A DNA stretch of 64,000 bases. Source: Andalucia godoyi And28 (taxonomy: Eukaryota; Protista; Jakobida). Every line of letters starts with the position of its first letter. The stretch's first letter is position 1. Of the stretch, positions 9,564 to 47,934 are shown piece after piece. A program made the translations under genes and the position numbers. The notes below the pieces were generated by a model. The model had not been told where the DNA came from, did no database searches, and saw nothing but the letters and a program-made list of their open reading frames with translations. Where the stretch lies: positions 124,001-188,000 of the forward strand of contig VRVR01000033.1 in the NCBI GenBank assembly GCA_009859145.1, written 5' to 3'.

Positions 9564-9664
9564 AGCCGGGGCTGGTTGCTGGTTGCTGCTGTCGTTGCTG
9601 TTGTTGCTGCAGGAGTTGGTCACTCTTTTCTTTTGAACGGCATCTTTTTTTCTTTATGGATTCG

Positions 9665-28069: not shown

Positions 28070-28478
28070 CTCGTCAGATCACCAATCAGCGGAATTCGTT
28101 CCGAAATGCAGAAAGGCAGAAAGCAAAACTGAAATCACAAAAATGACCTCCGCTGCAAATGCAAAAGAAAAGCCAGCAGCGACGGAAAGGGTGTGGGCAA
28201 TAAAGTCCGGCGAATACGACCTTGTACAACTGGCGAAAACGGCAAAAAACGGGGATTGACGAATCCGCTCGTTGGCTGACGGGTGACTGTTAAATTTTGG
28301 TCAATTTATTATTTTTCTTTCTTCTTCGTCGTCGTACCGGCATTTTCCCAGTTTTCTAAAATTAACATTGCCATCCATTCTTAGTGCAGCACGAAGTCTC
28401 CGTTTTACTTATTTATTTTAGGACCGGCATCTCCTTCGTTAAATTTAAAAATAAATAAAAAGGGGGGCCGAGGGGGAG

Positions 28479-31238: not shown

Positions 31239-31272
31239 CAATTTTGAAGTTTGGAAACATTTTGTACATAAT

Positions 31273-32490
31273 CTAGTAAGAATCGTTCGTCTTCCCATGA
31301 ACATTTCGTATACCAAACTTGATCGCTTTCAATATCCCTGCAGTGCAGGGAGCTTCAACAGCCGTGTGAATTCTGAACGCTAGACACGTGGTGAAATACC
31401 ACAACAATGAGAAAAACGCAAAAAACAAAGACCATGAAAAGACCCGGTGCCCGAGGGCAGATACTCCAGTCATGCAAGCACCAATGATCAACGGATGCAG
31501 GAGAAATGTCGCGTACGAACCGTCCGAAACCCGTTCGATGAATCGGAAGAAGAATTGCGGCGTGAAACTCCTGAACCCGACTTTTTTTTCGATAAACAAT
31601 AAAAGGACCATCGCAGTAAAAATGCAGCCGGACCAGAATAATCTAAAAGTTGAGCCGAAGAGGAAAGCGTCGTGCGGAGAGGAAGTGCGAAACCGCGGAG
31701 ACAATGCCGTGTCAGCAAAAGGCACCCAAAACGAAAGGATCCCAAGCAATGGACAAAAGATCGCGGCCGTCACCGTACTTGCAAGAAGTGCTGAGGCCGT
31801 TACATTTGACTGAAGAAACAAATTCGAAAACAAAAGTCCAGCAAGGAATGGAAGAGACCTGCATACTGCGCTCATGTAGACGCCATCGTGAAAGGCAGCG
31901 ACAGAAGACACGTATGGCGTCTCGAGAAAGTTGACATCAAAAACCCGCAAGGGAAATTCCAGTCCCTGATCAAAAACTAACATGTGAAATGCAAAGAGCC
32001 TCCACAATAGAACAAGCGCAGCACTTCCACAAACAACGCGCAGAAACCAACGGCTGCAGGGCAACGGAAGAGCAGCCGCAAACAAATGAAGTTTGACATC
32101 CACAGAAAGACTCCAAGTCCACGTAGCAAACACCTGTTGAAACGGGGTGTGATTGTGCATAAAGAAGAGAGACTTCAAAAAGTTTTCTTTTCCGTGCATA
32201 GGTGTTGTGAGCAGACAAATACAAAGTAGCAGCGTGTGCAATACAGACAGCCGCATGACTCGATAGCAGAACTGCCACAGTCTTTCGGACATGTGTTGAG
32301 ATTGATACGTAGAACAGAACATGCCCGACAGAAAGAAAAAGATGTCCAGAGCATACTGTCCTGTCAGCAAAAACACAGGAAACGCCATGTTCTCTATATT
32401 TGCGAGGAACAACATGGATGATGCATGCATCATGAACATCCAATACGACGCGAATACACGTAGGACATCGCAGCAAAACAACCGCCGCAT
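31273..32490 (-). CDS. Acyltransferase-3 family (OafA/NRF-6-like) membrane O-acyltransferase
   Basis: DVLRVFA..W...H, ALDIFFFLSG, TWSLSVD and SYATFLLHP motifs; many TM segments. Start codon uncertain. Confidence 0.8.
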   Translation of the reverse strand: MRRLFCCDVLRVFASYWMFMMHASSMLFLANIENMAFPVFLLTGQYALDIFFFLSGMFCSTYQSQHMSERLWQFCYRVMRLSVLHTLLLCICLLTTPMHGKENFLKSLFFMHNHTPFQQVFATWTWSLSVDVKLHLFAAALPLPCSRWFLRVVCGSAALVLLWRLFAFHMLVFDQGLEFPLRVFDVNFLETPYVSSVAAFHDGVYMSAVCRSLPFLAGLLFSNLFLQSNVTASALLASTVTAAIFCPLLGILSFWVPFADTALSPRFRTSSPHDAFLFGSTFRLFWSGCIFTAMVLLLFIEKKVGFRSFTPQFFFRFIERVSDGSYATFLLHPLIIGACMTGVSALGHRVFSWSLFFAFFSLLWYFTTCLAFRIHTAVEAPCTAGILKAIKFGIRNVHGKTNDSY

Positions 32491-32960
32491 GGTTTTTCCC
32501 AGATGCAACTCACTGGAATGGCACGACGGGAGAAAGCTCTTCTTTGAAACAAGCACTTGTCTTCATGCGCCAACGTACCCCCCGCAAACTGTGTTGGCAA
32601 GAATCACCTGCAAAGAAAAAGGACTCAATGCTTTATTCTGTTTTGCTGTTCATTTGTTTTTGCATATTTTTCATCTGTTATTATTATTATTTTATTTATT
32701 TTTTGTCGGCGCGCACACTCTCTGCAGCTGGCAGCTAGCATCAAACGTAAATTTAAAAGGGTTTGAGGAGGGAGTCCGAAAGACGAAACAGCCGAAAGCT
32801 TTCGTTGTTGTTGGGGCAGCTTCACTAATCGCCCCAAGGTAATACATTTTAAAAAAACATGGCTCACTGGATTGGTGCTGTTGCCGAATCAAAATGCGTT
32901 TGAAAAAAAAGAGAACGTTCTGAACAAGACAGTTGGGGGAGCGACAGAAAAAATCTGCAA

Positions 32961-32990
32961 CTTCAGGGCGCACCCATTTAAATAAAAGCA
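32961..32990. repeat. 30-nt intergenic motif also present at 7587-7616
   Basis: CTTCAGGGCGCACCCATTTAAATAAAAGCA versus CTTTAGGGCACACCCATTTAAATCAATGCA, 26/30 identical, with weaker similarity on both flanks. Confidence 0.5.
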
Positions 32991-33458
32991 AAAAGAATCC
33001 GGGAATCGTTCACGAAATGTCACGTGTGCACTTTTCATCGTGTCATCCCCACCATCATCATTTGGAACAGTGTCTTCATCCGGTGCATAGTCGACATACT
33101 CCACCGCATAAGGTTCTGCGGCTGCTTCATCTTGGACACAGTCTACTTCCCTCGATGGGAAGATCTTCCGGGACGTGCCCTTGCTCCTGTGTCGTTCCCC
33201 CGTCTCCGTCTTCTTGACCACCCCCGGCATACGAAATCCATCAACATAAGAAGATCTGACTCTGTAGGTATTTCAATAATCTTGGGGATGTGGTTTCCTT
33301 TGGCAGGCTCAAAGACTGCATCACGCAAAACATGAAAACCAAAACCAAAAATAATATTAATAAACAATAAACAATTAATAATTAGCAATTAATATACAAT
33401 AAATAAATAATAAATAATTCAAGTGAATGAGAGATTCGCGTAAACACGCAAGGGACAA

Positions 33459-36400
33459 TTACGAGGAGCACATAGTGCATCCTTCTTCTCGGGTGCACAC
33501 CCATGCCGCAGGGTTCTCAGCAGTATTCGACGAATCTGCATTCTTGACTTCGTTGCTGACGACAACACTGGAGTCCACAGTGAACTTGATTGCATCTGCG
33601 GCAGGCCGTGTCCGCAAGTAGTACATTCCAGTTTTAAGACCAAGTTTCCACGCATAGAAATGCAAACTGGAAAGTTTTGAATTGTTGGGGGAGGCCATGA
33701 AGATGTTTAAAGATTGCGACTGGTCTATGAAACACCCTCGGTCAGCTGCGTAGTCCACGATGATGCGCTGCTTAATCTCCCATGCAGTCTTGTAAATTTC
33801 CTTGATGCTGTCCGGAATTCCAGAAATATTCTGAATGGATCCGCTCGAAGCAATGATGCTGTTCCTCATTTTCTCGCTCCAGAGGTTCAGCCGGATCAGG
33901 TCACGGACAAGATGATTGTTGACCACTGGGAACTCTCCTGCGAGGACACGGCGCAAATAAATGTTCGATGTGTACGGTTCAAAGCAGTTGTGCACAACCA
34001 CGCCATTCGCTACAAAGTTATGCAGATCTGCAACGTTGATGTCGTACACAGACACCTTTCCAGCAGGGCGTCTGTCGACAAGCTGCAATTTCATGGTGGG
34101 AGCCGCCGTTGCACGGATGTCCAGTGCGTATGTGTGCTGCTTGTTCGTCTCTTCGTCATCATCTTCAGCGCCAGACGCGAACCATCCGTGCGCGCCAATG
34201 TTTTCGAGAAAATGCTCGGCCGACATCACGGAATTGAACTTGAACTGTCGAAGCTCCTCCGTGTTGTGTTTGCGATGTTCATGAAGCTGAGAGACTGGCG
34301 GTTTTGACGGTCCGGGCGTCGCTTCGGCTGCTGCACAAACTTCCTCTTGTTGCCGACTCACCTCGGCCAGATAGCGCGACCATGCTGCGACGACTCCGTA
34401 GCGATGAGATTTGTGTACCGAGTAGCGGATACCAATCTTGTCCATGAACGTGTGTTGAGAGAGAGCACCCAATGGGAAGCCGACGCGCACGCACACATGC
34501 CCGTGCTCTCCGCAGCGGCAAGGTCTGTCGCCGTTAGTATTCTTCACATCTCGAATGTTGATGATCGACGCCCCAGGGACACCAGCTTCGGCCAGCAGTA
34601 CGCACAGTTGGTTCATAGCCGTAATCAGCGACTCGCGCTCAATCATACAGGCCGATTGCGAGAATCGGATCGGCGAGAAAGTTTTCACCTCGTTGTCGTT
34701 TCCTATAAGCACCGGAGTCCAGCCATCACCCCCAAAAAGTCCAGCCAGAAACTCACGACGCACTGCGACTGGGCAAGCGGGATCCAACACGAATGCAGGC
34801 CACGAGGCAGTTGATGTTCCCTGTGCACCGCTGACCGCACCTCCCAAATCCCCAATCGCACGGGCCAACGGGCCAGACACAACAACCTCGAAGCAATCTC
34901 GCTCGTTGATGCGAACAGTTGCTTTTCCACCGAGTGACTCGACGTCAGACACGAAGGCATCACGATCGAGGGGTTGCTCAAACACAGCAGTAACTTTCTC
35001 CGCCTGGACGGACCCGCCGGAGCGGACAAACCCAGCTACACGCGCGAACGCCAGCGCAATATCCCTTCCCGTCGCCGTGGTCAGAATACCAACTGCAGTA
35101 TCAAGAGACCATCCGTTCTCATCAGTACCGATTACATCTGGTGTTCCGGAGAAAGCTAGCATCACCGGAGCGCCGTTCAGCTCGATATTACGAGCCTCGC
35201 ACCACTCGCCACTCGTCATCATGAACTTGTGATCAGGAGTGCATGTGATGGTGCGTCCATCGGCGAAGGTGAGGCACACAACATCTTTCTCGCCTCGCGG
35301 AAGGAATTCGGTGACCTGAGCACCAACCATGCCTCCAGCTTTGTCGGAATAGGCTGCCACAATCTGTCCGGGGCGGATCTGATGAATGGGAACGCTGGTC
35401 CCGTTGAAGAGCGTGACTGGCGTGTCCCCGGAAAAACATTCGTTATTTCCAAGAATCTGGGAAGTGGACGCAGTAGGCATAGGAGCAACAAGAAGAGAGT
35501 TTCGAACACCAAATGTGTGGATTCGCTGTCGGAGCCCGTCCCAGTCCCAGCGGCCAGACAGCACCACGCGGTCCTTAGCCCACATGTCGAACTGCAGAAT
35601 TCCTTTGGACACTGGAGACCCTGGATATGTTTCATAAGGACCACTCTGTTCAGCAAGCGCACAAGACTCTGAAAGTGCGGCAAAGTACAAGCATTCAAAG
35701 ATCTCACGATTCAGATTACGCGCGACTTCAGACTCGAAAGGCATCTTTAACAGCATGAACACATCTGCAAGCCCCTGGACTCCTAGGCCTACTGGTCGGT
35801 GACGGAAGTTTGAACGGGAAGCCTTCTCGACAGGATAGTAGTTGACATCAATCACTCGGTTCAGATTTCGGACAACGAGACGAGTGACATTGTAGAGCTG
35901 TTCGAAGTCAAAAGACAGTTCTTCCGATTCATTCTTGATTTGGCTAACAAATCTCGGAAGCGCAATGGAGGCCAGATTACAGACAGCCGTTTCCTCAGAC
36001 GAAGAGTACTGGATGATTTCTGTGCATAGATTGGACGATCGAATGGTTCCCAGGTTCTGCTGATTGGACTTCGCATTTGCAGCATCTTTGTACAGCATAT
36101 ACGGAGTTCCTGTTTCCATTTGCGATTCCAAAATCGCGAACCACAACTCTTGTGCCTTGACGACACGTCGGGCCTTCCCAGCAGCTTCGTATTTTTCATA
36201 CAATGTTTCGAACGTCGACCCCCAGGACTCGTACAATCCTGGGCATTCGTGGGGACAAAACAAGCTCCATGTCGCATTCGCCTCAACCCTCTTCATGAAC
36301 AAGTCTGGAATCCACATTGCGTAAAACAAGTCACGCGCACGCATCTCTTCCTTTCCCGTACCCTTCTTGAGGTCCAGAAAATCAAAAATATCAGCGTGCC

Positions 36401-38402
36401 ACGGTTCCAGATAGACGGCAAAAGAACCCTTGCGCCGACCTCCGCCGTTGTGCACGATTCCGCTGCACAGAATCACATACGTCATGTTCTTCGCGACTTC
36501 GAGATCGTACAAGGGTTGGTTGCGACCTTCTTCTGCCGTAATTTCGACGTTTTCGATGCGAGAAAACGCATAGTCTCCGTGCCGCACACAGTTCACCCAT
36601 TCGCCTGTTGAAATTCCAAGGGCACGTGCCACAACTTCTGTACGAGGGACGCAAATGCAGTGCAAAACGCCTGTGCGCGCAAGCCCGTTCTCAAATCGCT
36701 TTTCGATGCGATCGCGAAGGTAACCGGATGTAAGAATGCCATGACGCATGAGCATGAATCGAATGCTGTCAACAAAGACTCGGGATGTCATTTCGATTGC
36801 TACTGCCTTTTCGCCAACGCATCCATCTGACTCAACAACGCCACGAAGAACAGCAAGAGTCTTATCTAGTGGCAGTCGCAGCATCGTTTTGTGGAATATT
36901 TTCTCGCGAAAATTGTTGTACAGGAGCTCGCGATCCGCAGGAATCTTCTCGGTTCGTTGGAACATGATCACAAGCGACCCCAATTTTTCAGATTCGTGCA
37001 CTTCAATGCCTTTCAATTGCAGGTACTGAACAACGAAATCACGAACGGCATATCCCCGTGATACATCGAGGAAGATTCGTGTTTCGTTGCTCGCTTCGTC
37101 AGACCAGCCGCCAGCAGACATTATGCCATAGAATCGACAGTCTTCTGCAGACCAGGCAACGTCCACGTGTGCTTTGTCTACCGGGAAGCAAACGAAGTCG
37201 CCCACATGCAAATCTTTTGCATCAAGCCATTCTGGCTGCACAGTGCCTTGTTCCAAAAGAATATGAATGGCATCGTAATTAGCAGATAGCCCGGGATCTT
37301 TCAGCACAAAAAATTGGTGTTCATCCGTAACCTCCACTGGCTCAATAGCATGCTTCACCGTGATGCGACGCATCGAACGGGGAGAATCAGAAGATGGTGC
37401 ATGCTCCAAAACACGATTCACATGACAGTACTCGCCCGTGTGGGTCATAACACGATCCCCAACTTTCAATGTGCGAATTTCCACGGGTCCATTTTCTGTG
37501 ATCACTTTCGTGTCTCCTGGAAAACACTGGTCGACGTATCGGGCAGTATCATTGAATACGCGAAGCATGGGAACGAGCCCATTAGATACACCATTTGTGC
37601 CCGCAATGTACGATCCCTTAGCTCGAATTGGATGAACTGATAAGCCTATTCCCCCAGCATACTTTGAAATCATGGCACATTCTTTTAGGGTGTCATAGAT
37701 CCCAACAATCGAATCATCTGACATCGTTACCAGGAAGCACGAGGATAGCTGGGGTCGAGGAGTGCCCGCGTTGAACAATGTGGGTGTCGCATGAGTATAC
37801 AAGCGACGAGACAGCATGTCGTACGTACTCAATACTTCGGAAACAGAAGAAGACAAATTCAAGCCGCAAGCAACACGCATCAACAAGTGCTGCGGACGCT
37901 CCGCAACTCGCCCATCGATCCTCAGAAGATACGATTTCTCCAGAGTTTTGAACCCGAAAAAGTCGTATCCAAGATCTCGCGAGTCGTCAACTGCCTCGTC
38001 CAGGACATCCTTGTGTTCTAAAACATACTCGAACAATTCCTGAGACACAAGCGGTGCTGGTGTGCCGGTCTGCGGATTCACGTAATTCCGCAATAACGTT
38101 GTTGTTTCCGAGAATTTGGACGGAGTAGTTTTGTGAAGTGCAGTGACTGCGATGCGCCCTGCAAGAACACTGTAATCCGGATGCTGTGGTGTTAAATAGG
38201 CTGCCGTCTCAGCAAGCAGCTCGTCGATCTTTGTGGTTGTCACAAGAGAAGGCGCACCGGATGCAACTTTGTCCAAAATAAGATCAATCGAAACCCAGGT
38301 CAAATCAAGACCATCACAGAGAGGAACAATCCGAGAGCGCAAGACTTCCCGATCGAAAGGAACGGAAGATCCGTCCCGTTTTGTCACGAGAGATGATGAC
38401 AT
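33459..38402 (-). CDS. RRM1: Ribonucleotide reductase class Ia large subunit (R1) precursor containing two inteins
   Basis: ATP cone (VTKRDG), catalytic SSCF, SNLCTEI and VCNLAS, tyrosine pair GMYYL, C-terminal CTMC. 1647 aa minus 360 minus 484 leaves an 803-aa mature R1, the expected size. Confidence 0.97.
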   Translation of the reverse strand: MSSSLVTKRDGSSVPFDREVLRSRIVPLCDGLDLTWVSIDLILDKVASGAPSLVTTTKIDELLAETAAYLTPQHPDYSVLAGRIAVTALHKTTPSKFSETTTLLRNYVNPQTGTPAPLVSQELFEYVLEHKDVLDEAVDDSRDLGYDFFGFKTLEKSYLLRIDGRVAERPQHLLMRVACGLNLSSSVSEVLSTYDMLSRRLYTHATPTLFNAGTPRPQLSSCFLVTMSDDSIVGIYDTLKECAMISKYAGGIGLSVHPIRAKGSYIAGTNGVSNGLVPMLRVFNDTARYVDQCFPGDTKVITENGPVEIRTLKVGDRVMTHTGEYCHVNRVLEHAPSSDSPRSMRRITVKHAIEPVEVTDEHQFFVLKDPGLSANYDAIHILLEQGTVQPEWLDAKDLHVGDFVCFPVDKAHVDVAWSAEDCRFYGIMSAGGWSDEASNETRIFLDVSRGYAVRDFVVQYLQLKGIEVHESEKLGSLVIMFQRTEKIPADRELLYNNFREKIFHKTMLRLPLDKTLAVLRGVVESDGCVGEKAVAIEMTSRVFVDSIRFMLMRHGILTSGYLRDRIEKRFENGLARTGVLHCICVPRTEVVARALGISTGEWVNCVRHGDYAFSRIENVEITAEEGRNQPLYDLEVAKNMTYVILCSGIVHNGGGRRKGSFAVYLEPWHADIFDFLDLKKGTGKEEMRARDLFYAMWIPDLFMKRVEANATWSLFCPHECPGLYESWGSTFETLYEKYEAAGKARRVVKAQELWFAILESQMETGTPYMLYKDAANAKSNQQNLGTIRSSNLCTEIIQYSSSEETAVCNLASIALPRFVSQIKNESEELSFDFEQLYNVTRLVVRNLNRVIDVNYYPVEKASRSNFRHRPVGLGVQGLADVFMLLKMPFESEVARNLNREIFECLYFAALSESCALAEQSGPYETYPGSPVSKGILQFDMWAKDRVVLSGRWDWDGLRQRIHTFGVRNSLLVAPMPTASTSQILGNNECFSGDTPVTLFNGTSVPIHQIRPGQIVAAYSDKAGGMVGAQVTEFLPRGEKDVVCLTFADGRTITCTPDHKFMMTSGEWCEARNIELNGAPVMLAFSGTPDVIGTDENGWSLDTAVGILTTATGRDIALAFARVAGFVRSGGSVQAEKVTAVFEQPLDRDAFVSDVESLGGKATVRINERDCFEVVVSGPLARAIGDLGGAVSGAQGTSTASWPAFVLDPACPVAVRREFLAGLFGGDGWTPVLIGNDNEVKTFSPIRFSQSACMIERESLITAMNQLCVLLAEAGVPGASIINIRDVKNTNGDRPCRCGEHGHVCVRVGFPLGALSQHTFMDKIGIRYSVHKSHRYGVVAAWSRYLAEVSRQQEEVCAAAEATPGPSKPPVSQLHEHRKHNTEELRQFKFNSVMSAEHFLENIGAHGWFASGAEDDDEETNKQHTYALDIRATAAPTMKLQLVDRRPAGKVSVYDINVADLHNFVANGVVVHNCFEPYTSNIYLRRVLAGEFPVVNNHLVRDLIRLNLWSEKMRNSIIASSGSIQNISGIPDSIKEIYKTAWEIKQRIIVDYAADRGCFIDQSQSLNIFMASPNNSKLSSLHFYAWKLGLKTGMYYLRTRPAADAIKFTVDSSVVVSNEVKNADSSNTAENPAAWVCTREEGCTMCSS
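33987..35438 (-). mobile_element. Intein 2 of R1 (484 aa), LAGLIDADG homing-endonuclease type, canonical Cys+1
   Basis: Inserted at QILGNNE|CFEPYTSN. Block A CFSGDT, block B ITCTPDHKFM, block E FLAGLFGGDG, block F VYDINV...HNFVANG, block G VVHN/C. Confidence 0.96.
36447..37526 (-). mobile_element. Intein 1 of R1 (360 aa), LAGLIDADG type, non-canonical Gly at +1
   Basis: Inserted at TARYVDQ|GGGRRKGSFAVYLEPWH. Block A CFPGDT, block B VEVTDEHQFF, block E LRGVVESDG, block F LYDLEV, block G IVHN, followed by GGC (Gly) at 36444-36446. Confidence 0.94.
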
Positions 38403-38715
38403 GAACTTGTGCAGGCAGGGAAAGAGGCCACCAAAAACAAAAAACAAAAAACAAAACAAAACAAAACAGAAGAGGGTAAAAAGACAGAGTTAGAATACAA
38501 AAGATTTGATGTTTCTTTGGAGGGTTTTTTAAAAAAACAAGAAAAAAGTGAATCAGTGAACATTGAAATGACGGGCAAATGGGAAAAAACAAATGAACAG
38601 GAAGAAACGGTGAGAAAAGAGGCCTTTGACTTGGGGTCGGACGACTTGCGGGTTGCGAGTGGGACTGGAGTGGAAGAATTTGAAATTCAGTCTGTTTGTG
38701 GCGGGGTTTTGTTTG

Positions 38716-38749
38716 TTTGGCGCCACAGCCGGATGGGTTCCGCGGGAAA
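38716..38749. promoter_or_regulatory. Pair of E2F-consensus sites in the putative R1/R2 bidirectional promoter
   Basis: TTTGGCGC at 38716-38723 (+) and TTTCCCGC at 38742-38749 (-), near the centre of the 608-bp head-to-head intergenic region. RNR genes are established E2F targets in animals and plants. Confidence 0.55.
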
Positions 38750-39010
38750 AAAACCCGATTGATGGTATTAGCGTGTTTCAGTGATCCGGCTCCCGCCAAC
38801 CGTCCACTGGCGCCACTGAAATTCGGACAAAACGACAAAATACACTCGAAATCAACTCAATCATCGCTTTGTCACGCATCTTTGTTTGTTTGCTGTTGTT
38901 GTTTTTTGCGTACTGTTTTGCTGTTTTCTTTTGAAACTTTTCAGTCTATTCCGGTTTATCTTTCTCAACTAACTTCTCATTTTTTTCCTCACCTTTTTCT
39001 CATTCTAACA

Positions 39011-40015
39011 ATGTCGTCGACTAACACTCACAGCAACAGCAATGACCAAAACGAGCTCATTCTGACTCCGAATCCTCGACGATTTGTGCTCTTTCCAATC
39101 AAATACCCTGAGATCTGGCACTTTTACAAGAAGGCGGAAGCCTCATTTTGGACGGCAGAAGAGGTGGACTTGTCTCAAGATCTCGGAGACTGGAACAGGC
39201 TTTCAGCAGACGAAAAGCACTTCATCAAGCACGTCCTAGCATTCTTTGCTGCTTCCGATGGAATCGTTTCCGAAAACCTCGCAACCCGTTTCATGGGAGA
39301 AGTTCAGATACCAGAAGCCCGTTGTTTCTATGGATTCCAGATTGCCATGGAAAACATTCACTCGGAAACATACAGTCTGTTGATCGACACATACATTTCG
39401 AACCCCACGGAAAAAGAACACCTGTTTGACGCCCTTGAAACAGTCCCGTGCGTTCAAGGAAAAGGAAACTGGGCACTAAAATGGATTGGCTCGTCTGGAT
39501 CCTTTGCAGAGCGCATCGTAGCCTTCGCAGCTGTCGAGGGAATCTTTTTCTCCGGATCATTCTGCTCAATTTTTTGGCTGAAGAAGCGGGGCCTCATGCC
39601 TGGCCTGACGTTTTCAAATGAGCTCATTTCTCGAGATGAGGGAATGCACTGCGATTTTGCGTGCTTGATGTACAAAATGTTGAAAACCCGGCTGTCCACT
39701 GAGAGAGTTCATCAGATCGTGAGGGAGGCTGTGGATATTGAATGTGATTTTGTCACAAATGCTCTACCAGTGGATCTGATCGGAATGAATTCCAAACTGA
39801 TGCAGCAGTACATCAGATACGTAGCAAACCGTTTGCTTCGAGAACTAGATCATCCAGAACTTTATCCAAACACCTCCAATCCTTTCGAATTCATGGAAAT
39901 GATTTCGTTGCAAGGTAAGACCAACTTCTTTGAGCGGCGTGTCGGAGAGTACGCAAAGGCCAACGTCAACACCTCACGCAGCGAGCAAGCATTCTCACTA
40001 GATGCCGACTTTTGA
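39011..40015 (+). CDS. RRM2: Ribonucleotide reductase class Ia small subunit (R2)
   Basis: [32 protein letters not shown] (radical Tyr), [17 protein letters not shown] and C-terminal FSLDADF. Confidence 0.97.
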
Positions 40016-40218
40016 AGGCCAGCGCTTTTTGGGGTGAGTGGTGGTGGGCGGATATTTGACGAAGCAGGCAGCGTGCTGGAGAGAGAGAAAGAGCAACAAG
40101 GAACACATGGTGTCGTGAACGCATCAAGAGACGTTATTTCGCTGTACAGCATACGCAGAACATAAACAACTCGTTTTTGTTTTTGTTTTTTTTAGCAAAA
40201 TTACTGAAGAATGATTCT

Positions 40219-41664
40219 TTATCCGCAAGAATGCTGAGACGGTCCAGTTTCCAATCTCTTTCCATTGATCTTCGAGACGAACTGCTCGGGAATCGGGATC
40301 TCTTCAAAATCACCCTCCTCGCTCGTAGGAATGCTGACATTCATCTCAGAAGACTTCGAACTCACAATCTCCACATCCATGGCATCACGAGACAGATACA
40401 CGAGACATCCCGAAGTAGCATCAATGGTGATTGACGGAACCTTGCCATTCGCCTGCAACTTCACGCTCGTGCAATTCACGACTTCAGCGTTGGAAACAAT
40501 GCTGTCAAAAACAACACCGCACTTCTCGCAAGAGTCCAACGTGATCGTGTTGACCTTTCCTTTGACGACAATAACGCATCGAGAACATCCATAAATGTAG
40601 ACATTGTTACGAATATTCGTGTCAGAGATCTCAATAGGATCGCTTTCACGGTTTGTCTGGTACTCGACAAGCCATTTGTTCCCATCCTGAGCAAGCTTGG
40701 GTGTTCCCTTGGGTACTGCGCCCTTCTTCGCACCCGTCACTGTTGATGCGACCTTCGGAGCTTCCACAACCACAGAAGATGCGGGGGGCTGGTTTTTCAT
40801 GTCCTTGGTAACCTTCTTCAACCCCGAAGTGACACCCTCGCCCTTTGACAATTCCGCAAACAATGCAGCTGTATTGGGTTTGTTGTCTCCGTTTGCCGGA
40901 GCTTCGTGGAACAGAGATGCCGGGGGCAGAGGAGGAGGAGGAGGGGGCGGGGCTGAACCACCAGCTGGCGGCTGTTTCGCAGAAGCAGCACTTAAGGAGT
41001 CCTTCGTTGCCGGAGACGCACTTTTGTTCCATGAAAGACCAGTCAAGTGGAAATTTCGGACGTAGTCACGGAGGGCAGACAACAGCGCTTCGTATGCCCC
41101 GATGTAGCCGAGTTGGACTTCGTCGCCCTTGAACTGAACACGGATCTTGTTGGTGTAGAACTTGGATGAATTGATGCCTTCGTCCACCAACGCAATTGGC
41201 GTCTTTGGTTCGGTAACCCAAGCGAGAGCCGTGACTCCTTCCGAAACAACCGAAAAGTGGTTGAAAAGCTCGCCTCTGTTCTTCTCACGAAGCGCAGCAA
41301 TTGCCTCCATCTTGGCTGCAGTCGGTTGCAAAAGTGCAGAAAAGACTGCGGGATCCGTGGGAGCAGAATAATTCGCGACAACACGCAGAAACGACCGCTG
41401 CGAAGAAAATGCCTCTGACAACAGCCCTGCAATGTCCTTCAACTTCGGATTCGCCTTGACGGCAGCTTCCGCAAACTGTGAAAGCTGGCCGGAAATGATT
41501 TCCTCGTATGCAACTTCAAAAGGAGAAAGAGCAGCAGAAGGTGCGGCGGCAGTCGACGACGGCTTTGCTGCAACTGCTGCGGCAACTGCAGAAGTACCAC
41601 CGAGAGCCTCAAGGCGAGAAACTGCCCGCTCAAGACGTTCAACCAACTGATGGAGGTCAGACAT
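40219..41664 (-). CDS. CAP1: Adenylyl cyclase-associated protein (CAP/Srv2)
   Basis: N-terminal LVERLERAVSRLE, HFD helical domain, polyproline, WH2-like ALFAELSKGEGVTSGLKKV and beta-helix CARP C-terminus. Confidence 0.95.
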   Translation of the reverse strand: MSDLHQLVERLERAVSRLEALGGTSAVAAAVAAKPSSTAAAPSAALSPFEVAYEEIISGQLSQFAEAAVKANPKLKDIAGLLSEAFSSQRSFLRVVANYSAPTDPAVFSALLQPTAAKMEAIAALREKNRGELFNHFSVVSEGVTALAWVTEPKTPIALVDEGINSSKFYTNKIRVQFKGDEVQLGYIGAYEALLSALRDYVRNFHLTGLSWNKSASPATKDSLSAASAKQPPAGGSAPPPPPPPLPPASLFHEAPANGDNKPNTAALFAELSKGEGVTSGLKKVTKDMKNQPPASSVVVEAPKVASTVTGAKKGAVPKGTPKLAQDGNKWLVEYQTNRESDPIEISDTNIRNNVYIYGCSRCVIVVKGKVNTITLDSCEKCGVVFDSIVSNAEVVNCTSVKLQANGKVPSITIDATSGCLVYLSRDAMDVEIVSSKSSEMNVSIPTSEEGDFEEIPIPEQFVSKINGKRLETGPSQHSCG

Positions 41665-41880
41665 GGGTTGCAAGGAATTGACCAAAGGAAATGGGAAAGC
41701 GGACAAAGAAAGGGGTAATTCACAACAACAAATTAACAGCTAAAAAATAATACTAATAATACTAATAATAAAAAGAGGGGAACGAAAAAAAAAGGAATGG
41801 AATAATGGGAATCCTCCGCAGTGGGACCCAACTTGCTGGCGGCCAGGTGCAGCTGCCCTCAAGGTCAGTTTCAAGTTCCA

Positions 41881-41920
41881 GCAATCCTGCAATCCTGCAA
41901 TCCTGCAATCCTGCAATCCT
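41881..41920. repeat. Tandem repeat (GCAATCCT)5
   Basis: Five perfect 8-mers upstream of CAP. Confidence 0.95.
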
Positions 41921-41945
41921 TGTTGATTTCTGGAATCCAGCATTA

Positions 41946-42176
41946 TACAACCCTCCAATCCAGCGGTCTGGTGGACGGCTGTGAAATCATCGGATAGTAT
42001 GGCTGAAGATGTGCAGGTCGAGGCCTAATGAGAGACACTGTCGGATAATGACAACCGATTTCTTGTAATCGATGATGGGCGCTGATGCTGATATATAAAG
42101 TCACTTTATGTGCCAAAAAGATCTGTCCATGGCGCAGCAGCATATGCGAGCCAAATGTTTGGAGAGGTTTTGGGTT
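41946..42176 (-). mobile_element. Degenerate dispersed repeat, copy B, homologous to 12018-12432
   Basis: Reverse-complement alignment to copy A in two blocks (see that entry). Confidence 0.6.
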
Positions 42177-42364
42177 GCAGGGGCAGTACTTCAGAATGCG
42201 GTGCGTGCGGGCACGCCAGCGGAGGGCTTCGTAACCCTCGATCAGTGTAACCGTCAAACTGGAGACGATAGATTTTCTATGAATGTGGAATCGTGTGTTA
42301 TTGCTAACCATCTTTGTGGTGACAATCGCAATCATTAATTACAGTGGCAGGCGTGAGGGAACAG

Positions 42365-43090
42365 CTAGAGCATTTTCCAAGTGCGAAATGGTGCTGGAAC
42401 AGTTCGAACACCCGTCCGACGAGACGAAAAGAATGCGACAGCGGAGGAAATGATGCTGAAGAACTGTATCAATATTCCAGTAAAGCAATAATCCATGCCA
42501 ACCGTGGTGGCCCATGAACTCACGGCACCCTGAGTAGAGGATGTGCCCATGACAGCATCGGCGGATGAGACTGGACACATGCCACCAGACGAGACCTTGT
42601 CAGAATCGCTGACTACTCCCCCGCAGAAGGAATGGCTGACGTACTCAACACGAAACAGCGTATAAACGGCCACTGAACACACGAACGATAGCGGGCAAGC
42701 AAAACAAGCACAAAAAACAGCAGCGAACTGAACATGTTTCCGAGAACCGACACAGCCCCACACAACACCGCCAAACGAAACAACATATGCAAGCCCAGAA
42801 AACGTAAGTGCCGCATACCCGAGGCCGCGAACATTAGAGAGAACGCTAGAAGCTTTAGCAGAGTCCACAGTGGGTGAAGACAAGCAGGCGTCTCCATTCA
42901 GACATCTGACGACTCCTTGTTCTGAAATGAACACAGTATACTCTGCCGTTGATATCGTCCCATCTGACAGGGTGGAGGCAACAGAAATGCGCCACCACGG
43001 ACTCACAACAGCACAACAGAGGCAGACAAACGCAGCAACACAAAATGCGGTTGCGAGAGTCAGTCCAAGGCACCCACGAGAATACCGCAT
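42365..43090 (-). CDS. Hypothetical Cys-rich multi-pass membrane protein (claudin/PMP22-like topology)
   Basis: N-terminal TM followed by PWW, extracellular Cys, three further hydrophobic segments. Family assignment is tentative. Confidence 0.55.
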   Translation of the reverse strand: MRYSRGCLGLTLATAFCVAAFVCLCCAVVSPWWRISVASTLSDGTISTAEYTVFISEQGVVRCLNGDACLSSPTVDSAKASSVLSNVRGLGYAALTFSGLAYVVSFGGVVWGCVGSRKHVQFAAVFCACFACPLSFVCSVAVYTLFRVEYVSHSFCGGVVSDSDKVSSGGMCPVSSADAVMGTSSTQGAVSSWATTVGMDYCFTGILIQFFSIISSAVAFFSSRRTGVRTVPAPFRTWKML

Positions 43091-46000
43091 AGGCGCGTGA
43101 TTCAAGACAGGAAGAAATTAAAGGATCTCGGGAAAAGCGCAGTGAAACTACATAGCGGACCAACAGCTTTCACACTCCACACACACTCCACAAACGCACC
43201 ACAAACGGACTACCGCGAGAGAGGCAAGCTGAGAATCCAGTGAGAAACCACTTGGAAGAATGGACGCTACGGTCGTTTGTGGGAGTAGCAAAGAGAAGTA
43301 CAATATGAAAAAAATTCGAGCCAGCTTTACAGCGAGGAAAAACGATTCTCGTGAAGTCGATGGGCGCTGCAAGCAGCCACTCCGATAAAACAGAAGTGAC
43401 GAATGTTCTGCTCGAGTTGAAGGAATTCCCTGCTCCATATTCGTCCGCTCTCACGCTGCTACAAGCACGAAAGCAATATCCGTCAGCACTGGTAGAAAAA
43501 ATTTCAAGGATGTCAAGCACTAATACAATAGGCTCCGAATAACACTGGTTCGGTAACGATCGCAGGGTGACTGGAATCTGTGGAAACGAAGCGACGTACG
43601 CGCGTTCATCAATGCTGGTGAAGGCGTGAATTCCACCTGGCAGACGTTGAAGTGATCAGACAACATTTCATCGGAGCGCATGCTGGGTGGAAGTGAACAT
43701 CCTGATTCAGTTGTCATCGGTGGAATAAAAAAGCCGGAAGAAAGCGGTTGGGAAACAACTAACGGGTTGCCTTTCCAGACAGATTCAGATGTCGCACAGG
43801 CAACAGACAATTAATGCATTACTTCTTTGCAGAATACGAACTGGCAACGAAAAATGAAGAGTGAAGTTCTTGGAGTACTCACAGCGATGGTTGCCGCAGC
43901 GATGCGTCCACCATATGCACAAAACGACAGGTCAACTATTTCCGACAGCCTTCATTTGGACAACTGTTGTCAACTGAAGACCGAGAGCTGCATGGTTCTG
44001 AATCTGATGTGCAGAGCAACAATAAATAAACAGCATACATGACATAGCCAAAACGAATCAGAGAGGATCGCTGGCTGCAGCAACACCGACGACAATAAAA
44101 CGTACTAGACAGCATCAATGCCAAAAATTCGATGGCAAAACAAAATGACGCCAGTTCAGCAGTTTCGTCGACGGATAGAATTTCGACGTTGCCGGTAATC
44201 GTGCAGGGACAACTATTTAGATAGTGATGCGTTTGCAATAGAAAACTCTCTTTCCGAATTGCCAATTATAATTAAAATTTCCCAGTCATTTGCAGAGCAA
44301 CTGTCGAGGAATATCGAAAAATGCTGTCTGGCTCCGGTGGCCTGATCAGGGAAGAGTCCGATGAACCTTTGCAACTCGCCTTTTGCTTCAAATAACGTGT
44401 ACTTCAGCATTCAATGAGACATCTGAGATTGCCACACAGGACACTTTCGATGCTTTTTATTTGTTGCACGCTACGAAACACGACGCCGTAAATGAAAATG
44501 ACTGGAAGATGTGCTCATCGAGTTGGAAGGCGGTACTCAGATTATCAAACAACACTGCGACAGGATGCTTCCTTTACTGTCGCTCTCGCTGCATCTCTGA
44601 GAAAATGCAGGGGAGGCTTTGTAGCGCAGCTGTGAAAGTTTTTTTAGAATGTGTTTCCAAGAATTGGCTGTTGACCTCACAGCTCTGTCAAATGTACTTC
44701 GAAATGAACAGGGTATGGTGGACGCCTCCAAAAATGGGCCCGATTATGAAGCTGTCGAATTTCAACTTTTTATCGAGTCATTCTTCGTCTTAGTGGTGTA
44801 TCGGTGTTGTCATCGTGCTTCCGGTTTCGCCGGCTTCATTGAGTTTGCATGCCTTTTCGTTTTTCCGAGGATTCGTGCAGGCCACAGACACCCCGAAGCT
44901 GGTCAACATTGGCGCTCTGCTGCATACCGTCAGTAGACATTCCGACCCCCCTCTTTTGCAGTGATCATCTGTGTTTCTCCTATCCGCTGTGACTCTTCCT
45001 GTTTTTTTTCGCAGTCGACACCGGTTTCGATCCATTTCACTCTGTTTTCCACATTTTTTCTGTCTGTGCATCTGACATCCGTGCTTCTTGCCTTGCACAA
45101 CTTAGTTCCGGCTCTTTTCATTTTCTTTCGATTATGTATTCAATGTCATGATTCACGTATTCTTCTCTTCCGACCGGCCCTGCTGCACATCTGAATGATG
45201 ATCAACACGCCGAGTTGGTTAGAAATGCGTGATCGCTATCTGTCCGTCGGCAGCTTGGGGTTGTTTTTTGCGTGTTGTCCGATTTTGAGCCCTTTTCTTG
45301 GTGTGCAGTGCATAGCAGGATTTTCCTTCTCCGCGCCATTCTGCGATGTCTGTATGTCTGTGTCTGTCCGTTCGTCTCTCTCTTTCTCTTGCACACTTGC
45401 GCACTATTTTCCGAGCGTTTTTGTTGTTGCTTGTCTGTGGGTGCTAGAACAACCTTGTCGCAACGATCTTGCTGTTCCTGGGATTTCTGTTTTGGAAATC
45501 GTTCGTAGTGGTGTTTCCGTTGTCGGACTTTTTTCTTTTTGTTGAACAACTTGCGAACCTGCATTCGTGATGCCTGCTTTGTTTTGGCGATCTTGGGATG
45601 CATGATGGAAACGAGCTTCTGGCTGACGAGGAGTGTTCGAGTGGCTTCCCACACAAAAGCAGGTGATTGCAGCGATATCGCTGATGCATCCGTGCATCCT
45701 TTAGATTACGCTCATCGCGCTGGGGAGCGCTGTCATTTGTCTCGACCTGTTGATGCCTCTATTGTGTCTCGCATTTCGGTTAAAACTGCTCATGCTCGTG
45801 CAGAACAGCGTGTCGACGTTCTCGACGAATGCTGCGCAAAATTCGAATCTTGTCAAAGCGCTCCTCAACCCACGCTGCTTAGAAGACCAAGTGTTGTTGA
45901 CAGGGTTCGATCGATGTCTCGTCGGTCTCGTGTTCTCCGTTCACGGACTAGTTTTGATTCGGAGATTGATCCTATCAGTGTTTTATCAGATACTATGAGA

Positions 46001-46433
46001 ATAGCTAAGGGACGAGTTGCAAATCGTGATTTGTTCACGAAATGTCGAACTTTGGACCAGGTTTCCGAGTACGACGCTCTCGGAATGCATCCATCCCTTT
46101 GCGAGCTGTCATTTGAATTCAGCGCCTTGAATCCATTTCTTTCAGACTCCAAGATTGTTAACGTGTTAGGCGATGCTCGCCCACAGAAAGCCAACGATAG
46201 CCTGAAGTTGGATTTCGCGCATTCCTCCACAGCAATGCTTCGAAAGAAAGAGAGGCATTTGCGATCATGTTATCCGTGAATTAATATATTCTCGTCGGAC
46301 AAGTAGTTGAGTTTTGAGGGGTGAAGCCAATACATATAACTTACCGGTTTGTCAGTTTATTTTATTGAGAAAACAAACGAACACACGATGGGTGTGCGAC
46401 GAGTTCCCGAAGCAGAAGGACTTTCCGTGCAAG

Positions 46434-47288: not shown

Positions 47289-47934
47289 CTTGAAAGAGTG
47301 TACGCCGCAGCGAGTGAACAGTAACGACCAAAATGAACAGGATCGACCAAACAAAATAGACAACAAAAAACAACAAAAACCAAAACTGAAAAAGGCGGAA
47401 TGAGAACAAGCTTGAAGTTGCGATTTGCGACGGTCCCGCGTGTGGCTCTTTCGATCTGCAGTCTGTACCAACGCTATAACTACGCAAGGTGCATGAAAGG
47501 CTCCTTTTTGCGACTCAAAAACGATGGTCACTGCATTCTGACTTTGAAGCATGAGGCTTTCTGGAAAGTTTTCCATGAAGGAGGTTCATTTTTTTTTGTG
47601 TTCAATTACTGGCGCAATATAGTGTCCAAATCTTTGATAGACGGTTTTACATTTCCACCCTTCTCTTCTTACTCTGGAGCCTAAGAGACAGCATCATCAC
47701 AACACATACAGACGGATGCCTGTCTATATGCATGTGTGATACTGAAAACCAGGCGTACATTCCACATTAGAAGCATGAAATTTTGCATGTGCGAACTTTG
47801 ATCTCTGCACCATTCACAGAATGGAACAGACACGACAACACAACGCGCAGCGCAAGCTTGCAGGATCACAAAAAAACGCACGGCGAAAATCAGCACGTCA
47901 TGTTCAGACCATTGATGACATGGGGGATTAATAC

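What the first reader, a model, noticed from the sequence alone, without database searches (positions are those of the whole stretch)
36444..37526. Intein with glycine at +1 in the RNR specificity loop: splicing without a C-extein nucleophile?
The DNA reads CAG|TGT...CAC AAC|GGC GGA GGT, so the intein starts with Cys, ends His-Asn and is followed by Gly. Standard splicing needs Cys/Ser/Thr at +1 for the branched intermediate. The extein junction VDQ|GGG matches uninterrupted R1 with no spare residue. It lies in loop 2, directly after the Gln equivalent to yeast Q288, so an unspliced or cleaved product should be inactive. As R1 is normally essential, this implies a non-canonical route, such as aminolysis by the Gly alpha-amine as proposed for some bacterial intein-like domains, possibly helped by the extra Cys in VILCSGIVHN. 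It could also act as a conditional switch on dNTP supply. I cannot confirm whether this site is already known from giant-virus RNRs.
Basis: partly seen in the sequence, partly recalled or inferred. Interest (0 to 1): 0.9.

Follow-up and report, generated by a model that had tools for sequence, protein, structure and literature searches.

The report
RNR intein family followed by glycine
The ribonucleotide reductase gene in this window carries a normal-looking intein that is followed by glycine instead of the Cys/Ser/Thr that textbook protein splicing needs; the same glycine is found in hundreds of relatives in giant viruses, Bacteroidota and eukaryotes, so a large natural intein family apparently leaves its host protein by a route that has not been tested.

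Summary
A 360-aa intein (window 36447..37526, minus strand) interrupts the R1 gene as VDQ|C…HN|GGGRRKG. It sits directly after the Gln that aligns with Q288 of yeast and human R1.

It is not an assembly error or a private mutation. At this same site, 85 of 114 family representatives have Gly at +1 and 28 have Ser. In a sample chosen without reference to the junction, 39 of 40 have Gly.

Gly+1 members keep Cys1, the block B Thr and His, the block F Asp and the terminal His-Asn almost without exception. Their homing-endonuclease catalytic Asp survives in only about half. About 11 are mini-inteins with no endonuclease at all. So the excision chemistry is under selection.

The +1 residue is simply the host's native residue. 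No Ala+1 member was found.

Most likely route (inferred, untested): a Cys1 thioester forms, Asn cyclization frees the Gly alpha-amine, and aminolysis joins the exteins, as proposed for type A bacterial intein-like domains. The main rival is cleavage only, giving a two-piece R1.

The site is already known (CroV RIR1, Ser+1). Gly+1 members from Pandoravirus and Cedratvirus are listed without comment in a 2018 supplement.

The parts
33459..38402 (-). R1 (ribonucleotide reductase large subunit) precursor gene: 1647 codons plus stop, with two inteins
   Evidence: ORF listing and translation. Pfam ATP-cone, Ribonuc_red_lgN and Ribonuc_red_lgC, E = 6e-204. The spliced extein of 803 aa is 60-66% identical to uninterrupted R1s.
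37527..38402 (-). N-extein, 292 aa, ending …FNDTARYVDQ (the last Gln aligns with Q288 of yeast and human R1)
36447..37526 (-). Intein 1, 360 aa: HINT splicing domain with a LAGLIDADG endonuclease domain inserted
   Evidence: It is 25% identical over its full length to the CroV RIR intein at the same site, E = 2e-37. Its GC content (0.491) equals that of the exteins.
37524..37526 (-). Cys1 (TGT), the N-terminal nucleophile; block A reads CFPGDTKVITENG
   Evidence: Cys in 73 of 76 Gly+1 relatives and 123 of 126.
37317..37328 (-). Block B, T67-D-E-H70 (the TxxH motif)
   Evidence: Thr in 65 of 76 and His in 76 of 76 Gly+1 relatives.
37104..37136 (-). LAGLIDADG motif 1 (RFYGIMSAGGW); the catalytic Asp position is Gly, so the endonuclease is probably inactive
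   Evidence: The family has Asp here in 38 of 76 Gly+1 members.
36819..36851 (-). LAGLIDADG motif 2 (VLRGVVESDGC); the Asp is retained
36447..36515 (-). Blocks F and G: PLYDLEVAKNMTYVILCSGIVHN. It contains F:4 Asp341, Met348 where the family usually has the F:13 His, the non-conserved Cys354, and His359-Asn360.
36444..36446 (-). The +1 codon, GGC = Gly, first residue of the C-extein GGGRRKGSF
   Evidence: Gly+1 in 85 of 114 representatives at this site and 39 of 40 in a junction-unbiased sample.
35439..36446 (-). Middle extein, 336 aa (GGGRRKG…SQILGNNE); it holds the SNLCTEI thiyl-radical motif
33987..35438 (-). Intein 2, 484 aa, canonical: NNE|CFSGDTPV…NGVVVHN|CFEP, with Cys at +1
   Evidence: It is 60% identical over 117 aa to the Spizellomyces punctatus RIR intein. 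Its GC content is 0.559 against 0.49 in the exteins.
33459..33986 (-). C-extein, 175 aa plus stop (CFEPYTSNIY…GCTMCSS)
39011..40015 (+). R2 (small subunit) gene, transcribed divergently from R1
   Evidence: The same divergent R2/R1 arrangement occurs in soil-metagenome locus L002, whose R1 has a Gly+1 intein at this site.

Best explanation
Intein 1 belongs to a large, old family of homing inteins whose home is the VDQ|GGG (or VNQ|GG, VNQ|SG) site in loop 2 of class Ia R1. The family is kept functional by selection even though most members are followed by Gly.

Proposed mechanism. Step 1 is canonical. Cys1, helped by the block B Thr and His, converts the Gln(-1)-Cys1 peptide bond into a thioester. 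The usual step 2, transfer to a +1 side chain, cannot happen. Instead Asn360, helped by His359, cyclizes and cuts the Asn-Gly bond. This frees the alpha-amine of Gly+1. The intein active site and the already folded R1 barrel hold that unhindered amine next to the thioester. It attacks the thioester directly (aminolysis). The result is the native VDQ-GGG peptide bond and a released intein. This is the route proposed for type A bacterial intein-like domains.

What is shown here: the sequence anatomy, the fold, the family-wide Gly+1, and the selective retention of the residues for steps 1 and 3.

What is inferred: that excision happens, the order of the steps, and that ligation (not just cleavage) is the outcome.
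For: 1. Gly+1 is the majority state. 85 Gly, 28 Ser and 1 Glu among 114 representatives (clustered at 50% identity) at this exact site. 39 Gly and 1 Ser among 40 complete inteins from metagenome loci found through internal intein peptides only. The HN|GGGKR junction also occurs in 31 bacterial species genomes and at least 120 viral contigs.

2. Precursors are intact. 126 of 151 such loci have both junctions in one open frame, and most of the rest are cut by a locus end. Complete ORFs run about 900-1500 aa.

3. Splicing residues are held while the endonuclease decays. In 76 Gly+1 inteins with a median pairwise identity of 28%: Cys1 73, block B His 76, F:4 Asp 75, penultimate His 73. The LAGLIDADG catalytic Asp is kept in only 38 and 40 of 76. 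In the 126 loci, Cys1, Thr, His and Asp are present in 123-126. About 11 are mini-inteins of 147-177 aa with every splicing motif.

4. Gly+1 is long-standing. On a neighbour-joining tree, Ser+1 forms essentially one clade (24 of 27). There are 3 parsimony changes and the inferred root state is Gly.

5. The +1 residue is the host's own. Intein-free R1s that are 81-86% identical to a Ser+1 host read YVNQSGRRKG natively. Intein-free relatives of the window's R1 read VDQGGG.

6. The window's extein keeps its functional motifs (SSCF, SNLCTEI, CFEP, GMYYLR, C-terminal CTMCSS). A working R1 therefore appears to be required.

7. The chemistry has a precedent. Type A BILs lack the +1 nucleophile and can ligate by attack of the freed amine on the thioester (Mills, Johnson & Perler 2014, PMC4031507).

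8. No Ala+1 member was found in IMG/VR, although R1s with Ala at that position exist. This fits a preference for the unhindered Gly amine.
Against: No experiment or proteomic datum here shows a ligated product.

In type A BILs cleavage products dominate over splicing. Canonical inteins mutated at +1 generally cleave but do not splice (general knowledge).

Conservation of Cys1 and His-Asn is explained equally well by selection for double cleavage without ligation.

The window's own copy is atypical. It has Met where 125 of 126 HN|GGGKR relatives have the F:13 His, a one-residue insertion before block G, and a decayed endonuclease motif. It could be less active than the family norm.

Giant viruses and many Bacteroidota may not depend on this R1, and whether they have other RNRs was not checked.

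The absence of Ala+1 could instead reflect endonuclease target preference.
Confidence: 0.5

Rival explanations
1. Cleavage only. The intein cuts itself out at both ends: the thioester is hydrolysed at the N-junction and Asn cyclizes at the C-junction. The 292-aa N-fragment and the C-fragment stay together without a covalent link, as a nicked but active R1 with an open loop 2.
For: This needs exactly the residues that are conserved: Cys1, TxxH, and the F:4 Asp with His-Asn. It needs no unusual chemistry. A class Ia R1 split into two polypeptides is fully active in phage Aeh1 (PMC3045599). In type A BILs cleavage dominates.
Against: The Aeh1 enzyme needs special charged tails to assemble. That paper notes none of about 1200 nrdA sequences is otherwise split, which argues for strong pressure to keep one chain. 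Loop 2 carries specificity information between effector and substrate sites, and Q288 and nearby residues matter for it (established R1 literature). Free charged termini at Q288 and G289 would probably disturb this. No extra tail residues exist at the junction.
Confidence: 0.2
2. The window's copy is a non-splicing dead end, a recent or decaying allele. dNTP synthesis would be supplied by an intein-free R1 paralogue or another RNR elsewhere in the genome.
For: The window's intein lacks the F:13 His, has an insertion before block G, and has lost a LAGLIDADG catalytic Asp. Only 64 kb of the genome is visible. The closest intein-bearing R1 found (P0170) has Ala in place of the redox Cys in NNECFEP, so odd R1 copies do exist in this neighbourhood.
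Against: The 1647-codon frame is intact and includes a second, canonical intein. All extein catalytic motifs are present. Intein GC content equals extein GC content, indicating long residence. R2 sits next to it as a divergent pair. The family-wide conservation shows Gly+1 is not in itself a dead end.
Confidence: 0.1
3. Excision and ligation occur by some other chemistry or with help. Examples: a host or viral factor, a different internal nucleophile relay, or participation of the invariant Gln(-1) side chain (a glutarimide-activated C-terminus) before attack by the Gly amine.
For: Gln at -1 is invariant. [quoted passage not shown] Positions F:6 (Glu/Lys/Gln in the Gly group, Asn in the Ser clade) and F:13 differ between the Gly+1 and Ser+1 groups.
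Against: Gln(-1) is the native, functionally required R1 residue, so its invariance says nothing about splicing. No extra conserved Cys, Ser or Thr specific to the Gly+1 group was found among the most discriminating columns. The family spans bacteria, eukaryotes and viruses, which argues against a dedicated helper.
Confidence: 0.1
4. The Gly codon is a sequencing or assembly error for Ser (AGC) or Cys (TGC).
For: A single base change would give a canonical +1 residue.
Against: Every one of 9 first-round homologues that reach the junction has HN|GGG. So do hundreds of independent assemblies. The uninterrupted host sequence is VDQGGG.
Confidence: 0.02
5. The intein is not removed. It is tolerated, or used as a regulatory module, as a permanent insertion in surface loop 2.
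For: Loop 2 is a surface loop.
Against: A permanent insertion would not need Cys1, TxxH, the F:4 Asp or His-Asn. These are 96-100% conserved while the endonuclease residues decay. Mini-inteins keep only the splicing domain.
Confidence: 0.05

Closest known systems
Cafeteria roenbergensis virus (CroV) RIR1 intein (InBase; sequences in Green, Novikova & Belfort 2018, Additional file 3)
   Same: Same insertion site (YVNQ|C…IVHN|SGRRKG). Same architecture: HINT domain plus LAGLIDADG endonuclease. Full-length homology to the window's intein (25% identity, E = 2e-37).
   Different: CroV has the canonical Ser at +1, which is the native residue of that R1 lineage. The window and most of the family have Gly.
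Pandoravirus (inopinatum, salinus intein 1, dulcis) and Cedratvirus A11 RNR inteins, as tabulated in Green et al. 2018, Additional file 3
   Same: Same site and same Gly+1 junction: N-extein …ARYVDQ or …RYVNQ, C-extein GGGKRKGAF or GGRRKGA. They are members of the same family in cultured viruses.
   Different: They are only catalogued. Neither the table notes nor the main text comments on the missing +1 nucleophile. The window's copy is in a eukaryotic nuclear gene and has Met at F:13.
Canonical class 1 inteins with a LAGLIDADG endonuclease (PI-SceI / Sce VMA1, TliVMA, PI-PfuI)
   Same: Same fold (Foldseek E = 1e-18 to 1e-15, TM-score 0.6-0.7). Cys1, block B TxxH, block F Asp and terminal His-Asn are present. 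The insertion is in-frame at a conserved functional site of an essential enzyme.
   Different: These use Cys, Ser or Thr at +1 to form the branched intermediate. Here +1 is Gly, so steps 2 and 4 of the class 1 pathway cannot occur as described.
Type A bacterial intein-like (BIL) domains (Amitai 2003; Dassa 2004; Aranko 2013; summarized in PMC4031507)
   Same: A HINT domain with an N-terminal Cys and C-terminal His-Asn, followed by a non-nucleophilic residue. Ligation is proposed to occur by attack of the freed alpha-amine on the thioester.
   Different: BILs sit in variable regions of non-conserved bacterial proteins and carry no homing endonuclease. They mostly cleave, and are thought to generate protein variability. 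This family is a homing intein at one conserved site of an essential enzyme, and is found in three kinds of genome.
[quoted passage not shown]
   Same: Natural, monophyletic intein groups that lack one canonical nucleophile and still splice by a rerouted pathway.
   Different: They lack the N-terminal nucleophile and still depend on the +1 nucleophile. Here it is the +1 nucleophile that is missing.
Split NrdA of Aeromonas phage Aeh1 (PMC3045599)
   Same: A class Ia R1 interrupted by a mobile element that nonetheless gives active enzyme. It is the precedent for an R1 made of two chains.
   Different: The split is at the gene level, at a different site (between the Cys439 and Cys462 equivalents). 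Assembly relies on added tails and involves no HINT domain.

Membership tests
Intein (general: HINT-domain self-excising insertion) | In-frame insertion at a conserved site of a host protein whose uninterrupted homologues are colinear across the site | tested here: met
   118 of 120 R1 homologues read ARYVDQGG(G/N)KR.G without interruption. The window reads VDQ|360 aa|GGGRRKG.
Intein (general: HINT-domain self-excising insertion) | HINT fold with blocks A, B, F and G | tested here: met
   Pfam Hint_2. AlphaFold2 mean pLDDT 84.9. Foldseek matches to TliVMA, PI-SceI and PI-PfuI. The blocks were read directly from the sequence.
Intein (general: HINT-domain self-excising insertion) | Demonstrated excision and extein ligation | not testable with these tools
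   No experimental or proteomic data are available here. Function is inferred only from conservation.
Class 1 intein | Cys or Ser at position 1 | tested here: met
   TGT at 37524-37526.
Class 1 intein | Block B TxxH | tested here: met
   T67-D-E-H70. The His is invariant in 103 family members.
Class 1 intein | C-terminal (His)-Asn, or Gln/Asp | tested here: met
   His359-Asn360.
Class 1 intein | Cys, Ser or Thr at +1 (the nucleophile for the branched intermediate) | tested here: not met
   GGC = Gly at 36444-36446. Gly in 85 of 114 and 39 of 40 relatives.
Class 1 intein | Block F Asp (F:4) and His (F:13) | tested here: inconclusive
   Asp341 is present. F:13 is Met in the window, but His in 125 of 126 HN|GGGKR relatives and in 38 of 76 diverse Gly+1 representatives.
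Homing intein (LAGLIDADG endonuclease-bearing) | Two LAGLIDADG motifs with catalytic acidic residues | tested here: inconclusive
   Pfam LAGLIDADG_3 hits. In the window, motif 1 has Gly at the catalytic Asp position and motif 2 keeps its Asp. The endonuclease is probably inactive in this copy.
Type A bacterial intein-like (BIL) domain | HINT domain with C-terminal His-Asn and no +1 nucleophile | tested here: met
   HN|G.
Type A bacterial intein-like (BIL) domain | Located in variable regions of non-conserved (often secreted) bacterial proteins, not at a conserved site of an essential enzyme | tested here: not met
   One fixed site in loop 2 of R1, in bacteria, eukaryotes and viruses.
Type A bacterial intein-like (BIL) domain | No homing endonuclease domain | tested here: not met
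   A LAGLIDADG domain is present in most members.
Type A bacterial intein-like (BIL) domain | BIL-specific sequence motifs or phylogenetic placement within BILs | not tested
   No BIL profile or BIL sequences were compared. The nearest solved structures and nearest sequences are true inteins.

The most novel reading that the evidence does not exclude
A whole natural class of homing inteins (hundreds of lineages in giant viruses, Bacteroidota and eukaryotes) splices efficiently with no side-chain nucleophile in the C-extein. It would join Gln to Gly by direct aminolysis of the Cys1 thioester, well enough to sustain an essential enzyme. That would amount to a fourth mechanistic class of protein splicing, and a ready-made source of traceless ligation at Gly.
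Probability: 0.45. Interest if true: 0.9.

Novelty: new variant of a known kind. Interest (0 to 1): 0.78.

Why it matters
The requirement for Cys, Ser or Thr at +1 is treated as universal for inteins. It also limits intein-based protein engineering, because a nucleophile scar is left at the ligation site.

This is a large, selectively maintained family that lacks that residue at a fixed site in an essential enzyme. It turns the question of whether a HINT domain can ligate without a C-extein nucleophile at useful yield into a directly testable one. There are many natural sequences to try, including mini-inteins of about 150 aa.

Either outcome would be informative. If they splice, this is a new mechanistic class and a traceless Gly-junction ligation tool. 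If they only cleave, then R1 works as a nicked two-chain enzyme in many organisms, which would be new for RNR biology and for loop 2 function.

It also shows that published catalogues already contain these sequences without the anomaly having been remarked.

Tried and rejected
1. Assembly error at +1. Rejected on family-wide conservation.

2. Shifted splice boundaries that would put Cys, Ser or Thr at +1. None is possible. The flanks match uninterrupted R1 residue for residue, and the only nearby Cys (C354) is preceded by Leu, not Asn, Gln or Asp.

3. The near-terminal Cys as a helper. Not conserved.

4. A residue specific to the Gly+1 group that could act as a substitute nucleophile. The most discriminating columns are in the endonuclease domain or are Glu/Lys/Gln versus Asn at F:6. 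No Cys, Ser or Thr emerges.

5. Identifying the organism.
- Exact look-ups of the window's R1 and R2 found nothing.
- The best R1 homologues are only 60-66% identical.
- The neighbouring genes are clearly eukaryotic.
- Intein 2 resembles the Spizellomyces punctatus RIR intein. A chytrid-like fungus is a guess only.

6. Cluster look-up for organism names of ten family members. None was named.

7. PDB sequence search with the intein. No hit at E <= 1.

8. Cultured-phage examples.
- The tblastn matches in GenBank phages are inteins at other sites or in other genes.
- Tenacibaculum phage PTm1's nrdA intein sits at the S|C site, not this one.

9. Literature searches for Gly+1 or nucleophile-less inteins: seven full-text searches and twelve papers opened, including four reviews. 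No description was found. Gorbalenya 1998, Friedrich 2007 and Gallot-Lavallee 2017 are not held.

10. The search for related loci with the family alignment failed because it had no conserved stretch. A degenerate DNA pattern was used instead.

11. No close relatives (more than 44% identity) of the window's own intein exist in any collection searched. A dN/dS or population check of the +1 codon was therefore not possible.


Full report
**1. What is there**

The minus strand of the window carries one long reading frame, 38402..33459. It encodes a class Ia ribonucleotide reductase large subunit (R1) with ATP-cone, all-alpha and barrel domains (Pfam, E = 6e-204).

Two in-frame insertions interrupt it.
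- Intein 1 is 360 aa (window 36447..37526). Its junctions read …ARYVDQ|CFPGDTKV…VILCSGIVHN|GGGRRKGSF….
- Intein 2 is 484 aa (33987..35438). It reads …GNNE|CFSGDTPV…NGVVVHN|CFEPYTS… and has a canonical Cys at +1.

Removing both inserts gives an 803-aa R1 with all the usual functional motifs. Of its 120 best homologues, 118 are uninterrupted and read ARYVDQGG(G/N)KR.G across the site. The extein therefore has no spare residue, and +1 is the native Gly.

The Gln before the intein aligns with residue 288 of human RRM1 and yeast Rnr1. The functional role of loop 2 rests on the published R1 structures and was not tested here.

**2. It is a real intein**

- Pfam finds Hint_2 and LAGLIDADG_3 in the insert.
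- An AlphaFold2 model built from 12 family sequences is confident (mean pLDDT 84.9, pTM 0.87).
- The model's best matches among solved structures are endonuclease-bearing inteins: TliVMA (E = 1e-18), PI-SceI and PI-PfuI.
- Blocks A (Cys1), B (T67xxH70), F (Asp341) and G (His359-Asn360) are all present.

Two features of this copy are unusual within its family.
- Position F:13 is Met. It is His in 125 of 126 HN|GGGKR relatives, and in about half of the more diverse representatives.

The first LAGLIDADG motif has Gly at the catalytic Asp position, so the endonuclease is probably dead. The intein's GC content (0.491) equals that of the exteins (0.49). Intein 2 is richer (0.559), which suggests that intein 1 has been resident for a long time.

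**3. Gly at +1 is a property of the family, not of this sequence**

- First search. It returned 11 homologues (26-44% identity) from metagenomes and from Saprospiraceae and Obscuribacterales MAGs. All nine that reach the C-terminal junction read HN|GGG(K/R)R.
- Profile search of 1.84 billion representative proteins. It gave 541 hits below 1e-30. Among the best 150, 114 carry the intein at this exact R1 site: 85 with Gly+1 (HN|GGGKRKG or HN|GGKRKG), 28 with Ser+1 (HN|SGKRKG) and one with Glu.
- Degenerate DNA pattern for G-x-[VA]-H-N|G-G-G-K-R-x-G. It found 31 bacterial species genomes, almost all Bacteroidota MAGs (Saprospiraceae, Lewinellaceae, Chitinophagales, Cytophagales).
- Junction-unbiased sample. 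Metagenome loci were retrieved through peptides internal to the intein, so they were not selected on the junction. Of 40 complete inteins, 39 have Gly+1 and 1 has Ser+1.

This disposes of the assembly-error explanation.

**4. The excision chemistry is under selection in the Gly+1 context**

The 76 complete Gly+1 inteins from the representative set have a median pairwise identity of only 28%. Within them:

| Residue | Conserved in |
|---|---|
| Cys1 | 73 of 76 |
| Block B His | 76 of 76 |
| Block B Thr | 65 of 76 |
| F:4 Asp | 75 of 76 |
| Penultimate His | 73 of 76 |
| LAGLIDADG catalytic Asp, motif 1 | 38 of 76 |
| LAGLIDADG catalytic Asp, motif 2 | 40 of 76 |

. The terminal Asn was required by the filter that defined this set, so it is not an independent observation.

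In 126 precursors from genomes and viral contigs, Cys1, Thr, His and Asp are present in 123-126. About 11 of those are mini-inteins of 147-177 aa. They have lost the endonuclease entirely yet keep every splicing motif.

In 126 of 151 loci both junctions lie in one open frame. Most of the remainder are cut off by the end of the fetched DNA.

Homing needs only the endonuclease. Selection on the splicing residues can therefore only come from the host's need to get the intein out of R1.

On a neighbour-joining tree the Ser+1 inteins form essentially one clade (24 of 27). Parsimony needs three changes and infers Gly at the midpoint root. Rooting is uncertain. Even so, Gly+1 lineages are clearly old and diverse, not repeated recent accidents.

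**5. The +1 residue is whatever the host has**

Intein-free R1s that are 81-86% identical to the host of a Ser+1 intein read YVNQSGRRKG natively. More distant relatives have Ala, Gly or Thr at that position. So Ser was not acquired to serve the intein.

A scan of IMG/VR for the corresponding Ala+1 junction gave only two chance matches, neither in R1. R1s with Ala at that position are nonetheless common in the same neighbourhood (Marseilleviridae and prasinovirus sequences).

The family thus seems to live with Gly or Ser but not Ala. That fits a chemical preference for the unhindered Gly amine. It could equally reflect endonuclease target preference.

**6. Mechanism**

The canonical pathway is: N-S shift at Cys1, transfer to the +1 side chain, Asn cyclization, then S/O-N shift. 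It cannot run here, because there is no +1 side chain (PMC4031507).

The residues for the first and third steps are the ones conserved. The most economical route to a functional single-chain R1 has three steps:
1. A thioester forms at Gln288-Cys1.
2. Asn360 cyclizes, releasing Gly289 with a free alpha-amine.
3. That amine attacks the thioester.

This is the scheme proposed for type A bacterial intein-like domains, where ligation without a nucleophilic side chain has been reported, although cleavage dominates. Here the two halves of the R1 barrel, already folded around each other, would hold the two ends of loop 2 together. That could favour ligation over hydrolysis; this last point is my inference.

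I put this at about 0.5.

The main rival, at about 0.2, is double cleavage without ligation, giving a nicked two-chain R1. The conserved residues explain this equally well, and it has a precedent in the fully active split NrdA of phage Aeh1. That enzyme, however, needs special tails, and its authors stress that R1 is otherwise always a single chain.

Other possibilities are individually less likely and are listed with their tests in the rival explanations:
- this copy is a dead end backed up by a paralogue;
- some other chemistry or a helper factor is involved;
- the intein is a permanent insertion;
- the Gly codon is a sequencing error.

**7. What is known already**

The site is known. The InBase-registered CroV RIR intein sits at YVNQ|C…IVHN|SGRRKG. 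It is homologous to the window's intein over its whole length.

Additional file 3 of Green, Novikova & Belfort 2018 also lists RNR inteins with Gly+1:
- Pandoravirus inopinatum, P. salinus (intein 1) and P. dulcis, with N-extein …ARYVDQ and C-extein GGGKRKGAF…;
- Cedratvirus A11, with …RYVNQ | …LAHN | GGRRKGA.

So Gly+1 members in cultured giant viruses have been catalogued as inteins. I found no remark on the missing nucleophile in the table notes or in the main text.

None of the reviews or surveys I could open describes an intein with a non-nucleophilic +1. Several relevant subscription papers are not held. I therefore cannot exclude that the point has been made somewhere.

**8. Verdict**

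The helper-Cys idea is not supported, and the switch idea remains untested.

I class the feature as a new variant of a known kind: an intein family that fails the +1 criterion of class 1 inteins and works, if it works, like a type A BIL without being one.

Interest is high. The claim is directly testable with many natural sequences, and either outcome (nucleophile-free splicing or a nicked R1) would be new.

Noticed in passing
window 33987..35438 (-): A second, canonical intein (484 aa, +1 Cys) sits at the GNNE|CFEP site of the same R1. It is 60% identical over its first 117 aa to the Spizellomyces punctatus (chytrid) RIR intein. Its GC content (0.559) is clearly above that of the exteins (0.49), suggesting a more recent arrival than intein 1. 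No LAGLIDADG Pfam hit falls in it.
   Followed up: partly
window 38403..39010 and L002 7867..10025: R1 and R2 are a divergent gene pair sharing about 600 bp of intergenic DNA. The same head-to-head arrangement occurs in a farmland-soil eukaryotic contig (L002) whose R1 carries a Gly+1 intein at the same site but is broken into several gene calls, apparently by introns.
   Followed up: no
P0170 (Logan contig, 1070 aa): The closest intein-bearing R1 to the window's has a 208-aa mini-intein at the same site (HN|GGGRRKGS). It reads GNNEAFEP: Ala replaces the Cys that follows intein 2 in the window. This Cys is presumably the redox partner equivalent to E. coli C462 (from memory). It could be an inactive paralogue, a variant or an assembly error.
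   Followed up: no
L188-L195 (metagenome loci); P0037, P0099: A subclade of Gly+1 inteins ends Lys-Asn (…GLVKN|GGGKRNGS) instead of His-Asn, so it lacks both the penultimate His and the +1 nucleophile.
   Followed up: no
Green et al. 2018, Additional file 3, Chrysochromulina ericina virus row: The sequence listed as the N-extein of the CeV R1 intein itself contains …ARYIDQCVVPETYIYTKNG…. That is an unlisted second intein at the loop 2 site. Its closest look-alikes in my set (P0083, P0137) have Gly+1.
   Followed up: no
L155 (Tenacibaculum phage PTm1, AP019524.1 42342-45754): The phage's nrdA is annotated as two ORFs. The first ends inside a LAGLIDADG intein inserted at the YAS|CF site (the Cys225-equivalent site). 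About 550 bp separate it from the second ORF. It is either a broken or a split intein, at a different site from the finding.
   Followed up: partly
window 1..64000: The window is intron-poor eukaryotic nuclear DNA at about 48% GC. Large ORFs on both strands encode an ABCG transporter, CstF77/Suf, an EF-hand protein kinase, a VPS13-like protein, a tubulin-tyrosine ligase, CAP and glutathione synthetase. None of the exact look-ups found the organism in the collections.
   Followed up: partly
family alignment, intein positions 343 and 348 (window 36483..36500): The Gly+1 and Ser+1 groups differ at two block F positions. F:6 is Glu/Lys/Gln in the Gly group and Asn in 21 of 27 of the Ser clade. F:13 is His in 24 of 27 Ser+1 inteins but in only 38 of 76 diverse Gly+1 representatives. 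This could be phylogenetic signal or an adaptation to the missing nucleophile.
   Followed up: no
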